Of a stretch of 41,514 nt of DNA, positions 21,718 through 41,514 are shown in pieces. The stretch's first letter is position 1. Each line of letters starts with the position of its first letter. The notes beneath the pieces were generated by a model. That model was given only the letters and a program-made list of their open reading frames with translations. It searched no databases and was not told the DNA's origin. The position numbers and the translations under genes were made by a program. The stretch covers positions 82,989,238 through 83,030,751 of the forward strand of contig NC_068990.1 of assembly GCF_001194135.2 (NCBI RefSeq), written 5' to 3'. This DNA comes from Octopus bimaculoides. Its lineage: Eukaryota.

Positions 21718-22310
21718 GTCTATTATGCCAAACCATGCCAAATCAGACGGTTTGACTCACATTGTTAGTGCTTGTGAAAGTCCTTCGCAGAAACAGTCCA
21801 AGCGCGAACACGACAAGGCGGCCCAGAACCTTCACTGGCTACTATGCTGGAATTATGGATACGAGGTAACAGTTGCTTGGTACCAACATACATCAGAAAT
21901 GTTAATGGACGAAAAGGGCAAGGCAAACATTCTCTGGGGCTTTGACTTCCAGACAGACACCGAAGGTTGCATATAGTAACATTTGGGCGGGACAAATGTT
22001 ACTACATGAATGCCTAATAATCGACGTGACAGGGCCAGGAGATTAACAAATAATCATGAATTAAGAGAAAAGATTGATCAATATCAAGACATGAGAATTG
22101 AGATCGCTAAGATGTGGCAGCTACGAGTGTCAAACATAAAGGTTATCCCTATTGTCATCGAAGCATTAGGTTTAATACCACACAACCTGAAACTTTAGAA
22201 ATACCTTAGGCGAATTACAAAGATCAGCATTACTTGGAACTGCACGCGTATTGCGTAGAGTACTCTGTCAGAGATCCATGTTGTAACTTGACAGAGAGTA
22301 CAAACCCCAG
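21718..22310 (+). mobile_element. RLE-type non-LTR retrotransposon (R2 superfamily, R4/Dong-like), 3' fragment
   Basis: HIVSAC (CCHC knuckle end), REHDKAAQNLHW, WYQH, NILWGFDFQTD, REKIDQYQDMRIEIAKMW, VIPIVIEALGLIP. These match the R4/Dong-type C-terminus. Confidence 0.9.
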
Positions 22311-23043
22311 TACATGCAATATCTTCCATAAACAACATCACGATATTGGATATTGTGCGATGTCTTAAATAATGATAATTATGATATTATTTTTGTGCAA
22401 ATATAAGGCTATTTTCAAAATTGTTTATGCTAAATTCATATTAAAAGCTTATGCTTTGAAGAAATATAACTCATTTCCCATTCTCCGAGCGTGCAGGTAT
22501 TGCGTGAAACAGTGAGTAGGTGGTATATAATGTCTCTTTGAATGCATGTATGTATATATGTATGTATGATCATTGCCACGTACATGTAAGGTGTTTGTAA
22601 TTGTACTTTATTCTTGCATGTGTGTATGCATGTATGTATGCATGTATAGCTAGAGAGAGACAGAGAGCGGTAAGGGGAAATAGATAAGTATAATTATTAA
22701 AACCGGTCTAGTGGCTTGTTACTCTAGAATCTTCACGTTGCTCAGCTGCTTTTTCAGACGACTCGCGAAACCCATGTTTCTTTGAGGTTGCTGATGCATT
22801 ACGACAAGTCCAGTGGAGAAGGCCACCGATCTGCCAGAATAAATTACTGTAATATGTTTATAGATTACTGCTCTGGGACTTTCTTTAATATCAGATATAT
22901 GCTGGAAAGCCCAGAGACAAACTTTGTCCATTTGTGAGACAAGGTTAGTCTTTTTAATCAGTCTTCTGTATATGATACACGCACACATACATGTATGTAT
23001 TCACATATACATACACACACACACACGCATATATATATATATA

Positions 23044-37990: not shown

Positions 37991-38034
<44 letters not shown>

Positions 38035-38039
<5 letters not shown>

Positions 38040-38260
38040 TAACGTGGTGCCGGTGGAAGTCGTGTTTATGTTAACCTAGGTTTCCCAACTCTTTGCAACA
38101 ACATGGAAGCTTTTGAAGAGAATGCTGACAATGTTTTTTGTCATTTTCGAACATCGTTATGCGGGAGTAGTGGCTTCAGCGAAATTATATCTTCTCGCTC
38201 TCTATGTTGCTCAAACAACGTAAAAGATTATGTTAAGAGAATAGATTCACCTGCACCTCA
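38035..38260 (+). mobile_element. Possible decayed hAT (Charlie-like) transposase C-terminus
   Basis: FPTL..HFRTSLCGSSGFSEI loosely resembles YP.L..PF.TSYLCE.GFS. Confidence 0.25.
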
Positions 38261-38619
38261 AATCTATTTGTTTTATTAGTTGAAGTTATATCTAACCTTT
38301 ATATCTTACCATGTAAATTATTAAAAAACATTTCCGTTTTGGAGCAGGAAGATATCTCAAATGTCGGCTTATAAATATACATCTGTTTTTTTCTTCTTAA
38401 TATATTCATTTATCAACTTTAACATTTTAAGAACTGTTCACCTGTTAATGCATTGAATCTGTTATAAAAATGTAATACATATAGAGAAGTTCATACCGAT
38501 GCATTTAACCTGTAAACCTTTATCTACATTAGACAGCTTTATCAGTTCTGTCTTTGGTGACGTTCACTTTAATATGCAGAAGCCATTGAATAGGGCATCG
38601 GGGTCAATGTGATATAATA

Positions 38620-39120
<501 letters not shown>

Positions 39121-39500
39121 GCATTCATGAAGTCATACACTGGAAAATAGTCATAGATAAATAACAAAATACGCACAGATGTAGAGAGATACAAGTTACA
39201 TACCTACCTACATCAAAACCGACAATCATACGCAGAGACATACGTAAATACATCCATTCATAGATACATCGTAGTTACTCCATCTTCACGCATGTTTGCC
39301 GTCTTTGCACCTGGAGCAAAGTATAACTGAAATTGGGTTCTAACTTAATTGGGCTAAAATTGATCACGATTACTAGGGCTATAAAAATCTGAGAAGGCTC
39401 CTTCGGATTTAACAAGATGCTTCCCTTCACACGCTTGTTAACAAGCAGGTGACCTGTAAAAATGTATTCTAAATTAAAAAGAGGAAGATGAAAATGCTTG

Positions 39501-39533
39501 CATACATACATACATACATACATACATACATAC
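39501..39533. repeat. (CATA)n microsatellite at the 5' junction of the RLE element
   Basis: Seen directly. Confidence 0.95.
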
Positions 39534-39535
39534 GT

Positions 39536-39949
39536 AAGCATAATAAGCCGGATATTTGCCAGTGGGGCAAAGGTATGCACCGTCATAGAGGTTAGCAGCC
39601 CTGCAGATATCACTTTGAAAATCAAAGAAAAAGAAGATATCTATGGACAACTGCTTCGAAACATCCATTTTCTATATCCAGACTATAAATTCATAGCAAT
39701 AGGTTTTCTTAGTAAATTCTTAAAGGAGAATCTGGATAAACTGGGATTTACAGAAAGACAATCGATCGGCTAATTCATACATTACAAGTGCAATCTGTGA
39801 GTGGAACAGTAAAAATATGCAAAACTTTTCTCAAGTTCCGAATGTGAATTTGTTCGTGTTAACTACATCCCAAAGATGGAGCCTTGTATCTTTGTTGAAA
39901 ACCGGCTGCCTCCTCAATTGAAGATTTATGATAATTTAAAAATAGAAGA
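39536..39949 (+). mobile_element. 5'-truncated RLE-type non-LTR retrotransposon (R2 superfamily): endonuclease plus 3' UTR
   Basis: KHNKPDI..VCTVIEVSSPADITLKIKEKEDIYGQLLRNIHFLYPDYKF..LDKLGF..LIHTLQVQSVSGTVKICKTFLKFRM* (stop ends at 39847). PD..E.S.P..EK..Y is the PD-(D/E)xK RLE signature. Confidence 0.88.
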
Positions 39950-40152
39950 TACATACATACATACATACATGCATGCATGCATGCATACATACGTACGTAC
40001 ATACATTCATACATACATACATTCATACATACATACATACATACATGCATGCATACATACATACATACATACATACATACATACATACATGCATACATAC
40101 ATATATATATACATACATACATATATATATACATACATACATACATACATAT
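39950..40152. repeat. (CATA)n microsatellite with variants at the 3' junction of the RLE element
   Basis: Seen directly. Confidence 0.95.
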
Positions 40153-41470
40153 GTAAAATCAGACAGAGACGTACTTGCAAATATGTATTCTGCAAGGATT
40201 TTTCTGCAAAGAAGTGCACAACTAACGTGCATTTTACAAATACAGTCTCTAAGATGAACAACAAAATTGTGTAAAGCATTTCTAAACACATCATTGTTGT
40301 TTTCCAAATTCCAATGATAGAATTTGTTAGAAAACAGCCCCTTCTTTGAAGAGTTCAATTAGGAATGTAAAAGACAGAAAAAATGCTTATATTCCCACAT
40401 ATATATACATATATATATTTATATATATANNNNNNNNNNNNNNNNNNNNNNNNNNNNNNNNNNNNNNNNNNNNNNNNNNNNNNNNNNNNNNNNNNNNNNN
40501 NNNNNNNNNNNNNNNNNNNNNNNNNNNNNNNNNNNNNNNNNNNNNNNNNNNNNNNNNNNNNNNNNNNNNNNNNNNNNNNNNNNNNNNNNNNNNNNNNNNN
40601 NNNNNNNNNNNNNNNNNNNNNNNNNNNNNNNNNNNNNNNNNNNNNNNNNNNNNNNNNNNNNNNNNNNNTATATATATATATATATATATATATATGCATA
40701 TACATGCTCATAAAGATACACAAGGACTTATACACGGAATCAAGCAGAGCTGTACAAATACAAAGATACATACATGTAAAAAGTATAGACGAAAATAGGA
40801 TATAAATGGATAGATTAGTAAACAGGTATAAAGATAACAGATACGTACATGCATTAATAATTATTTACATAATTATCTATGGATGTACTTTTGTGTATAG
40901 GTGTGTATATTTATGCAAGTGTCTGTTTGCAGAAACAACCTAGAAAGAGGGGGGAGGAGAGAGAGTGGTAGGGATAGAAAGAATAATGACAACATGAAAA
41001 CGTATAGAGTAATATCTAGAGCAGAATAGAGAAATAGACGTGTTATCAAAAAAGCCAGGATAACCAATATCACAAAACACACACACAGACACGGACGCGG
41101 GAAGAGTGTGTAAGTGTGTGATTATATAGTTAGGCAAGCAGTCAGATAGATGAATAATTAGGTACACTGATATATGCACTGGCAGACACACAACTAGGCA
41201 AATAAATAAACAAAAGTTAAGTCCAGCAGATGGTATCAAAGATGAATATACTATGTAAATAATTCATGGAGAGAGAAAGGTAGGAAGAAAGGCAGAATTC
41301 ATAATGGAAGTACACATCTATCACATGATTTGCTAGAAAAACAAATTGATATACTAGAATAGGCATACTTAATTAGTTTCGACAAACATTGAATTACATG
41401 TGTATGAATGCACGTGTGTAAGTGCGTATATGTACGCATGTAAAGCCATAAAATCTGGTGGCATGGAAGA

Positions 41471-41514
<44 letters not shown>

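What the first reader, a model, noticed from the sequence alone, without database searches (positions are those of the whole stretch)
39501..40152. RLE retrotransposon bracketed by (CATA)n: candidate microsatellite-targeting element
Seen: a 5'-truncated element starts directly after a (CATA)n run (..CATACATAC|GTAAGCATAATAAGCCGGAT, KHNKPDI). After its stop codon and about 100 bp of 3' UTR it runs directly into a second, same-strand (CATA)n array (..AATAGAAGAT|ACATACATAC). A 3' array alone could be a tail, but the same repeat at the random 5' truncation point is what insertion into a pre-existing (CATA)n would leave. Established: RLE-type elements are often sequence-specific (R2/R4 rDNA, NeSL spliced-leader genes, Utopia U2, Dong TAA repeats). 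I am not aware of a described (CATA)n/(ATGT)n-specific family but cannot check the literature. Inference: such an element would use an abundant safe-harbour repeat and might help seed or expand it.
Basis: partly seen in the sequence, partly recalled or inferred. Interest (0 to 1): 0.72.

Follow-up and report, generated by a model that had tools for sequence, protein, structure and literature searches.

The report
LINE retrotransposon that targets (ACAT)n repeats
A dead, shortened copy of a jumping gene of the R2/Dong kind sits inside a CATA microsatellite, and related copies in octopus and argonaut genomes show that this family habitually lands in that repeat: a new target for a known behaviour, not a new kind of element.

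Summary
Window 39534-39948 is a 5'-truncated, frameshifted 3' end of a non-LTR retrotransposon with a restriction-like endonuclease (RLE). A perfect (CATA)8 precedes it at 39501-39533 and an (ATAC)51 follows it at 39949-40151. No element homology continues upstream of 39501.

I compared nine octopod copies from other loci and assemblies. Seven abut a same-strand, ACAT-type array at their 5' ends, six clearly and one in decayed form. These include five different truncation points and one full-length Argonauta element. Chance gives about 0.2% per junction. A Dong-like family in the same O. vulgaris locus is flanked by (AAT)n instead. Sister families in unidentified assemblies are flanked by (ACTT)n on both sides. 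The flanks are therefore family-specific.

This is best read as a lineage of microsatellite-specific, R2-group LINEs that insert into (ACAT)n. Microsatellite-specific RLE elements are already known: Dong (TAA)n, Togen (TG)n and some HERO families. ACAY repeats are a known target of the APE-type Waldo. The finding is therefore a new member of a known kind. It is unresolved whether protein recognition or pairing of the RNA tail sets the target, and seeding of repeats was not tested.

The parts
39501..39533 (+). 5' flanking microsatellite (CATA)8.2, perfect. Read as the upstream remainder of the target array.
   Evidence: TRF; sequence. There is no element homology upstream of it.
39534..39847 (+). 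Copy 1, coding remnant: the C-terminal restriction-like endonuclease domain (KPD..E.S..K motifs), 5'-truncated just before KHNKPDI. It has two frameshifts and a deletion of about 7 codons. Stop codon TGA at 39845-39847.
   Evidence: Translation; homologues; profile match E=2e-22; alignments.
39848..39948 (+). Copy 1, 3' UTR (101 bp), ending ..TTTAAAAATAGAAG(AT). The exact end cannot be separated from the first repeat unit.
   Evidence: Alignment with L002 and L006 3' UTRs. The terminal motif AAAA(A/T)A(A/G)GAG is shared with L002 and Argonauta L014.
39949..40151 (+). (ATAC)50.8 array, 91% pure. It is the 3' flank or tail of copy 1 and also the 5' flank of copy 2.
   Evidence: TRF.
40152..40388 (+). 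Copy 2: a second, more severely 5'-truncated copy of the same family but a different subfamily. It holds the last ~30 codons (..LQIQSLR.TTKLCKAFLN) plus a 3' UTR ending ..AAAAAATGCTT. Homology is clear from 40196; the first ~45 bp are uncertain.
   Evidence: Profile hit E=3.6e-4. DNA local score 42 against L006, where the shuffle maximum is 28. Alignments to L001, L006, L008 and L013.
40389..40429 (+). AT/ACAT-rich simple sequence after copy 2. It runs into an assembly gap (N 40430-40668), so the 3' flank of copy 2 is not readable.
   Evidence: Sequence; N runs.

Best explanation
The region holds two dead, 5'-truncated copies, in tandem, of a cephalopod non-LTR retrotransposon family of the RLE-bearing (R2) group. 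The family has a single ORF with an N-terminal helical domain without zinc fingers, then RT, a CCHC motif and a PD-(D/E)XK endonuclease, an R4/Dong-like architecture. The family integrates preferentially into (ACAT)n microsatellites in one orientation. The inferred mechanism is as follows. The endonuclease nicks the (ATGT)n strand of an existing array. The freed 3' OH primes reverse transcription at the element RNA's 3' end, which itself ends in (ACAU)n. cDNA synthesis often aborts, giving 5' truncation, and the cDNA is joined to the upstream part of the array. Each insertion therefore splits an array into a 5' remainder and a 3' remainder plus tail, and that array can receive the next copy, which gives tandem copies separated by arrays.

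Shown here: the element's identity, the junction structure, and its recurrence and family specificity. Inferred: the nick site, the order of steps, and what reads the target.
For: Identity:
- Homologues carry CCHC..RHD..EYWWN..HNKPD..(I/V)E(V/I)SCP.D..K..EK..Y.
- A profile of this domain hits only the C-terminal RLE of R2 proteins in the PDB (9nl3, 9dou; E about 2e-3).
- The RT of a relative hits R2 structures at E=4e-15.
- The full Argonauta ORF has RVT_1 and zf-RVT and no APE domain.

Targeting:
- 5' junctions directly on same-strand (ACAT)n are seen at window copy 1, window copy 2, L002, L006 ((CATA)21), L007 ((CCAT)n(ACAT)2.5) and the full-length Argonauta L014 ((ACAT)15). L013 copy 2 sits on a decayed ACAT-like tract.
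- Truncation points differ in every case.
- The chance rate is 0.19% per position, giving P(>=4 of 5) of about 7e-11.
- In L006 and L007 the upstream array is a compound (CCAT)n(ACAT)n microsatellite with no element in front of it, which indicates a pre-existing repeat.
- All arrays read ACAT on the sense strand.

Family specificity:
- A Dong-like RLE fragment in the same O. vulgaris locus is flanked by (AAT)n on both sides.
- Sister families in other assemblies are flanked by (ACTT)n on both sides: L012 full-length, L005 elements 1 and 2, and the L004 5' side.
- Tandem copies sharing an array recur in the window, L013 and L005.
Against: - The sample is small (nine octopod copies) and was gathered through protein hits, not a genome-wide census.
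- One copy (L013 copy 1) has no ACAT array at its 5' end.
- L008 has a mixed (ATAC)(AC)(TG) tract, and the truncated Argonauta copy L009 is obscured by a SINE.
- Some 3' flanks are (AT)n or decayed rather than (ACAT)n (L006, L008, window copy 2).
- L002 and L013 are short-read contigs, which tend to end in repeats.
- No empty site, polymorphic insertion or biochemical cleavage was available.
- The copies are old (70-77% DNA identity to each other), so flanks have had time to change.
- The clade assignment (R4/Dong versus HERO) rests on architecture, not phylogeny.
Confidence: 0.8

Rival explanations
1. RNA-tail-guided targeting. The endonuclease has little sequence specificity. Insertions succeed where the (ACAU)n 3' tail of the element RNA can base-pair with a nicked (ATGT)n strand to prime reverse transcription. 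The tail, not the protein, sets the target. This is a rival mechanism within the same targeted-insertion picture.
For: - The element's 3' end and its target are the same repeat in every lineage seen: ACAT, ACTT and AAT.
- ACAT- and ACTT-associated lineages are closely related and not cleanly separated in a crude tree of the RLE domain. Their units differ by one base, a switch that is easy for a tail and harder for a DNA-binding protein.
- From general knowledge, several LINEs need their 3' repeats for retrotransposition.
Against: - R2-group elements studied so far recognise targets through N-terminal DNA-binding domains (general knowledge; PMC7998251 argues the same for R4/Dong).
- The family has a conserved N-terminal three-helix module.
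- The tree has no support values.
- Nothing here measures priming.
Confidence: 0.3
2. Tandem copies made in one event. The reverse transcriptase jumped from the 5' end of one (truncated) RNA onto the (ACAU)n tail of a second RNA. The array upstream of a copy is then the tail of the next copy and not a pre-existing microsatellite.
For: - Copy-array-copy arrangements occur in the window (copy 1 - (ATAC)51 - copy 2), in L013 and in L005.
- Template jumping is known for R2 reverse transcriptase (general knowledge).
Against: - The DNA upstream of the window's (CATA)8 has no similarity to any element 3' end; scores equal those of shuffles, and there is no profile hit.
- The same holds for L006 and L007, where the array is a compound (CCAT)n(ACAT)n.
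- Full-length L014 and L012 have arrays preceded by unrelated DNA.
- The two window copies belong to different subfamilies.
Confidence: 0.1
3. Random insertion with an (ACAT)n tail only. The 3' array is an RT-made tail, and the 5' arrays are coincidences in a microsatellite-rich genome.
For: - Octopus DNA is rich in simple repeats; the window alone has several other CATA/TATG runs.
- Many LINEs end in microsatellite tails (general knowledge).
- One copy (L013 copy 1) lacks a 5' array.
Against: - Same-strand (ACAT)n precedes only 0.19% of positions, yet it directly abuts the 5' end in most copies, with P about 7e-11 for 4 of 5.
- Orientation is always the same.
- Other RLE families in the same DNA have other flanks.
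Confidence: 0.04
4. The repeat expanded inside a longer element, so the ORF continues upstream of 39501.
For: None found.
Against: - The profile and DNA searches of 39000-39540 find no RT, CCHC or RLE homology.
- The expected upstream codons (EYWWN..IKT..) are absent.
- Alignment shows truncation exactly at the array.
Confidence: 0.01

Closest known systems
Dong (R4 clade, RLE-type LINE; Bombyx mori, Anopheles, Biomphalaria, ostracods, cnidarians)
   Same: - Single-ORF element with RT, CCHC and a C-terminal PD-(D/E)XK endonuclease, and no N-terminal zinc fingers.
- Inserts into a microsatellite that then flanks it on both sides (PMC3812793, PMC7998251).
- LINE/Dong-R4 is an abundant, partly active class in octopus genomes (PMC8967140, PMC13282606).
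   Different: - Dong's target is (TAA)n; here it is the tetranucleotide (ACAT)n, with (ACTT)n in sister lineages.
- A true Dong-like fragment flanked by (AAT)n in L006 is only about 31% identical in the RLE domain and falls outside the tetranucleotide group in a crude tree.
- Clade membership was not tested by RT phylogeny.
Waldo (WaldoAg1/2, WaldoFs1; R1 clade)
   Same: Targets ACAY microsatellites, which include (ACAT)n (PMC3812793, citing Kojima and Fujiwara 2003). The 3' flank of the Argonauta copy is in fact ACAT/ACAC mixed.
   Different: Waldo is an insect element with an N-terminal apurinic-like endonuclease. The family here has a C-terminal restriction-like endonuclease and no APE domain. 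The shared target is convergent.
Togen (NeSL-related, fish) and microsatellite-specific HERO families (leech)
   Same: RLE-bearing LINEs with microsatellite targets: (TG)n for Togen, and unspecified microsatellites for some HERO families (PMC4640811).
   Different: The repeat units and hosts differ. HERO is annotated separately from Dong-R4 in O. vulgaris (PMC13282606). I could not place this family relative to HERO.
R2 (28S rDNA-specific)
   Same: It gives the only solved structures that match both the RT (E=4e-15) and the RLE profile (E about 2e-3). It presumably shares the target-primed reverse transcription chemistry.
   Different: R2 has N-terminal zinc fingers plus a Myb domain and a unique rDNA site. 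This family has no N-terminal Cys/His motif and a repeat target.

Membership tests
RLE-bearing (R2-group) non-LTR retrotransposon | Reverse transcriptase domain of the LINE type | tested here: met
   The window copy lacks it because of truncation. Family members carry it: RVT_1 at E=8e-27 in Argonauta L014, and R2 structures are the best PDB hits at E=4e-15. L006 retains the RT thumb region upstream of the RLE.
RLE-bearing (R2-group) non-LTR retrotransposon | CCHC motif followed by a PD-(D/E)XK endonuclease C-terminal to RT | tested here: met
   C.LC..E..H.I..C, then KPD, (I/V)E(V/I)S and K..EK..Y are conserved in 26 sequences. The profile aligns KPD, the acidic residue and the EK..Y stretch with the R2 RLE. 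zf-RVT scores 28.8 bits. The window copy keeps KPD, IEVS and KEKEDIY.
RLE-bearing (R2-group) non-LTR retrotransposon | No apurinic-like endonuclease | tested here: met
   Pfam finds no Exo_endo_phos domain in the full L014 ORF.
R4/Dong clade | Position within the R4 clade in an RT phylogeny with reference elements | not tested
   No named reference sequences (Dong, R4, Rex6, HERO) were available. The database hits carried no element names.
R4/Dong clade | N-terminal Myb/SANT-like domain without zinc fingers (PMC7998251) | tested here: inconclusive
   The conserved N-terminal block (RNRDY..W.YEL...LY..Y....GY.KR...W...HPE....K.L.DQA.RI) is predicted as three helices with pLDDT 71-89. There is one Cys in the first 100 residues. 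Pfam gives no Myb hit and the fold search gives no significant match.
R4/Dong clade | Target is (TAA)n (Dong) or 28S rDNA (R4) | tested here: not met
   The flanks are (ACAT)n, whereas a separate Dong-like fragment in L006 has (AAT)n.
Target-sequence-specific LINE | The same sequence flanks independent copies at both junctions, including variable 5' truncation points | tested here: met
   Seven of nine octopod copies have an ACAT-type array or remnant at the 5' junction, at different truncation points and at one full-length 5' end. One is negative and one mixed; L009 is obscured and counted as uninformative. P is about 7e-11 against chance.
Target-sequence-specific LINE | Fixed orientation relative to the target | tested here: met
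   All flanking arrays read (ACAT)n on the element's sense strand. (ATGT)n arrays exist in the same DNA.
Target-sequence-specific LINE | An empty target site exists, or the endonuclease cleaves the target in vitro | not testable with these tools
Waldo (R1 clade, ACAY-specific) | N-terminal APE endonuclease and R1-clade RT | tested here: not met
   The endonuclease is a C-terminal RLE and no APE domain is present.

The most novel reading that the evidence does not exclude
In this lineage the target may be chosen by base-pairing between the element's own 3' repeat tail and the nicked microsatellite. A one-base change of the tail unit (ACAU to ACUU) would then retarget a whole family. Each insertion would lengthen or renew the array, so the elements would build their own landing pads and help shape the unusual tetranucleotide-repeat load of cephalopod genomes.
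Probability: 0.2. Interest if true: 0.7.

Novelty: new member of a known kind. Interest (0 to 1): 0.42.

Why it matters
Target-specific RLE retrotransposons are the natural models for site-directed, RNA-templated gene insertion, so every independent change of target shows how specificity is encoded. This lineage has sister families flanked by (ACAT)n and (ACTT)n, whose units differ by one base, and a (TAA)n Dong-like family lives in the same genome. That contrast allows a clean test of protein-read versus RNA-tail-read targeting.

For cephalopod genomics, part of the abundant 'Dong-R4' annotation is tied to tetranucleotide arrays. Such arrays are frequent assembly break points; the window has a gap right after copy 2. 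This may bias estimates of both repeat and element content. If the claim is wrong, the region is simply two decayed LINE fragments next to microsatellites.

Tried and rejected
- **A third copy upstream of (CATA)8.** I suspected by eye that its 3' end lies there (..AAAAGAGGAAGATGAAAATGCTTG resembles the element termini). Local alignment scores of 18-23 equal the shuffle means of about 20 and there was no profile hit, so I rejected it.
- **A fixed 5' junction phase.** Four junctions end ..ATAC|. The alignment shows 1-5 nt of possible microhomology at L007 and L002, so I do not count this as evidence for a fixed second-strand cut.
- **Rfam search.** I looked for a 5' ribozyme or other RNA in the window (38000-41514) and at the L012 5' end. 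Only sub-threshold, repeat-derived miRNA look-alikes came up.
- **Clade naming by database names.** No element names were attached to any hit.
- **N-terminal fold.** The model has mean pLDDT 63.8 and no PDB match with E below 0.7.
- **Pattern scans.** I scanned the metagenome and prokaryote-genome collections with a conserved 18-mer. Of 134 loci, none carried the element, and one weak protein hit is SufS.
- **Argonauta L009.** The 5' junction is obscured by a SINE and no 3' array is present, so the copy is uninformative.
- **L010.** The (ACAT)12(ACAG)25 array lies 1.8 kb upstream of the ORF, with low-complexity DNA between, so the 5' end could not be fixed.

Full report
**1. The observation**

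Tandem Repeats Finder reports a perfect (CATA)8.2 at 39501-39533 and a 91%-pure (ATAC)50.8 at 39949-40151, on the same strand.

The 415 bp between them translate in frames +1, +2 and +1 as KHNKPDI / ..KVCTVIEVSSPADITLKIKEKEDIYGQLLRNIHFLYPDYKF..GFLSKFLKENLDKLGFTERQSI / DRLIHTLQVQSVSGTVKICKTFLKFRM*. The stop codon is at 39845-39847 and a 101-bp untranslated tail runs into the array.

A search of the protein collection with this stitched peptide returned 16 homologues. The best is an intact 176-residue C-terminal ORF (P0001, 63% identity).

**2. What the element is**

- An alignment of 26 homologues shows a CCHC motif (C.LC..E..H.I..C) followed by RHD, EYWWN, HNKPD, (I/V)E(V/I)SCP.D and K..EK..Y.
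- A profile of this alignment matches only the extreme C-terminus of R2 retrotransposon proteins among all solved structures (9nl3, 9dou; E about 2e-3). The match aligns KPD, the acidic residue and the EK..Y stretch with the R2 restriction-like endonuclease.
- Upstream parts of related elements carry a LINE reverse transcriptase whose best structural relatives are also R2 proteins (E=4e-15).
- A nearly intact element in Argonauta hians (L014) has one ORF of about 1173 codons with two in-frame stops. It encodes an N-terminal conserved block, RVT_1, zf-RVT and the endonuclease, with no apurinic-type endonuclease.

The window copy is therefore a dead 3' fragment of an RLE-type (R2-group) LINE. 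It has two frameshifts and a small deletion.

**3. The surroundings in the window**

A profile search of six-frame translations found no element homology in 39000-39540, so the ORF does not continue upstream of the repeat. I suspected by eye that the DNA just upstream might be the 3' end of another copy. Local alignment scores were no better than shuffles, so I dropped this idea.

Downstream, the same profile hit the DNA immediately after the (ATAC)51 array (..QRSAQLTCILQIQSLR.TTKLCKAFLN, E=3.6e-4). DNA alignments to four other copies confirm a second, more severely truncated copy at about 40152-40388. It belongs to a different subfamily. It ends ..AAAAAATGCTT, followed by AT/ACAT-rich sequence and an assembly gap.

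The finding is therefore array - copy 1 - array - copy 2, rather than a single bracketed element.

**4. Other copies**

Read mapping was not available. I collected loci through exact look-ups of homologous proteins, and the junctions are tabulated.

| Copy | Source | 5' flank | 3' flank |
|---|---|---|---|
| L002 | short-read contig | (ACAT)n; 872-bp copy truncated about 460 bp further upstream than the window copy | (ACAT)n |
| L006 | O. vulgaris | (CATA)21; 1.6-kb copy truncated in the RT | (AT)45 with ACAT remnants |
| L007 | O. vulgaris | (CCAT)n(ACAT)2.5; 275-bp copy | degenerate (ATAC)13 |
| L013 | short-read contig | two copies separated by about 150 bp of decayed ACAT-like sequence; the upstream copy has no array at its 5' end | ACAT-like, decayed |
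| L008 | O. vulgaris | mixed (ATAC)(AC)(TG) tract | decayed |
| L014 | A. hians, full-length | (ACAT)15, directly preceding the element | ..AAAAAAGAG then ACAT(AC)nACATTCATAC |
| L009 | A. hians, truncated | obscured by a SINE | no array |

The first bases of L014 (ACACGTGG..) share an ACGTG motif with the 5' ends of two other full-length relatives.

Counting the two window copies, seven of nine octopod copies abut an ACAT-type array or its remnant at the 5' end. This holds at five different truncation points and at one full-length end, always in the same orientation.

In about 100 kb of octopus DNA a perfect same-strand 10-nt (ACAT)n precedes 0.19% of positions. Four or more hits in five would have P of about 7e-11. 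In L006 and L007 the upstream array is a compound (CCAT)n(ACAT)n with no element in front of it. This is what a pre-existing microsatellite looks like, not a retrotransposon tail.

**5. Family specificity**

The same O. vulgaris locus (L006, minus strand) holds a fragment of a different RLE family with the classic ..IDM..GALG..LTGTSHALRR ending. It is flanked on both sides by (AAT)n, the known Dong target.

Another RLE family ends in 20-bp tandem units instead. It is seen in the window at about 21740-22350 and in L010.

Sister families about 50-55% identical in the endonuclease domain occur in unidentified eukaryotic contigs of three ENA assemblies. They are flanked by (ACTT)n:
- a full-length element with (ACTT)6 at the 5' side and (ACTT)24 at the 3' side (L012);
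- two elements in tandem sharing an (ACTT)108 array (L005);
- a truncated copy abutting (TTAC)45 (L004).

One further element ends in (ATAC)48 (L010).

Each family therefore carries its own repeat at both ends. This argues against a general effect of a repeat-rich genome. A crude neighbour-joining tree of the endonuclease domain groups all tetranucleotide-associated copies apart from the two Dong-like fragments. It does not separate ACAT from ACTT lineages, and it has no support values.

**6. Mechanism**

The best-supported reading is target-specific integration by target-primed reverse transcription into (ACAT)n. It has these inferred steps:
- a nick in the (ATGT)n strand;
- priming at the RNA's own (ACAU)n end;
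- frequent abortive cDNA synthesis, which gives 5' truncation;
- joining to the upstream part of the array.

This splits an array in two and leaves a fresh array for the next insertion, which explains the recurrent copy-array-copy pattern. The junction anatomy and its recurrence are shown. The nick site and the order of events are inferred from what is known of R2.

What reads the target is open. One possibility is a DNA-binding module. The conserved N-terminal block is predicted as a three-helix unit with pLDDT 71-89 and has no zinc-finger residues. This is compatible with the Myb/SANT-like domain reported for R4/Dong (PMC7998251), but neither Pfam nor the fold search confirmed it. The other possibility is pairing of the RNA tail with the target. 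The one-base difference between the ACAT and ACTT units of closely related lineages makes this attractive but unproven.

A template-jump origin of tandem copies cannot be excluded for the copy-array-copy cases. It does not explain arrays preceded by unrelated DNA.

**7. Comparison with what is known**

- Microsatellite-specific LINEs are established: Dong for (TAA)n, Waldo for ACAY, Mino for (AC)n, Kibi for (TC)n and Koshi for (TTC)n (PMC3812793).
- Togen targets (TG)n and some HERO families target microsatellites (PMC4640811).
- R4/Dong elements are described as inserting into rDNA or microsatellites and as lacking N-terminal zinc fingers (PMC7998251).
- LINE/Dong-R4 is abundant and partly active in octopus genomes, and Hero and R2 are also annotated (PMC8967140, PMC13282606). 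Neither paper mentions target preference.
- I found no description of an RLE-type family specific for (ACAT)n or (ACTT)n in the searchable library. Repbase Reports and Dfam notes are not searchable here.

The family works like Dong. Membership of the R4 clade proper was not tested by phylogeny, and the defining (TAA)n/rDNA target is not met. Waldo shares the target but not the endonuclease type.

**8. Verdict**

The element is ordinary in kind and new in target: a new member of the known class of microsatellite-specific RLE retrotransposons.

The seeding or expansion idea remains untested. Array lengths at the 5' and 3' sides show no consistent asymmetry.

The main weaknesses are the small, non-random sample of old copies and the lack of empty sites. 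A genome-wide junction census would settle the matter.

Noticed in passing
window 21740-22350 (+): Fragment of a different RLE-type LINE (..IIDVTGPGD..EKIDQYQDM..IPIVIEALG..LLGTARVLRR-like; tblastn E=2e-15 to the L010 minus-strand element). Its 3' end carries GATATTAT/GCAAATAT-like units that resemble the 20-bp tandem tail (ATCGCAAATATGATATTATC)18 of that element. It is not flanked by a microsatellite at its 5' side.
   Followed up: partly
L006 4140-3480 (minus strand), O. vulgaris OX597815.1: Dong-like RLE fragment flanked on both sides by (AAT)n, the classical Dong target. I used it as an internal control for family-specific flanks.
   Followed up: yes
P0035 (NCBI 'MAG: Pseudomonadota bacterium' AAFN09_17640) versus L014 12770-13519: The protein of a bacterial metagenome-assembled genome is 98% identical over 248 residues to the Argonauta hians retrotransposon. 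The MAG almost certainly contains a mis-binned cephalopod contig.
   Followed up: partly
L005 about 12100-12440: A long, near-perfect inverted repeat (two arms of about 160 bp) sits inside the 5' UTR of the full-length (ACTT)n-flanked element. It could be an inserted foldback element or an assembly artefact.
   Followed up: no
L007 9990-10070 and L013 240-320: The same SINE-like sequence (..GGTTGCAAAGCAAAC..CTTAACCAC..) lies just upstream of the 5' junction of two independent truncated copies. ARAGORN finds no tRNA. It might be a SINE whose tail array served as the target, or a partner SINE.
   Followed up: partly
L014 9185-9200, L012 6750-6780, L005 11881-11925: The 5' ends of three full-length relatives share an (A/G)ACGTG(G/T)TT motif within about 40 bp of the upstream array. 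It may be a conserved 5'-terminal signal (promoter or RNA-processing site). Rfam found no ribozyme at the L012 5' end.
   Followed up: partly
window 38619-39120: About 500 bp of compound tetranucleotide arrays ((GATA)n, (GACA)n, (GGAC)n and (GATC) variants), in two blocks about 380 bp upstream of the finding. The whole window is riddled with simple repeats and 11 assembly gaps that mostly abut (AT)n/(AC)n runs.
   Followed up: no
L004 16125-17568: A 167-bp satellite (8.6 copies, 77% matches) in the unidentified ENA assembly.
   Followed up: no
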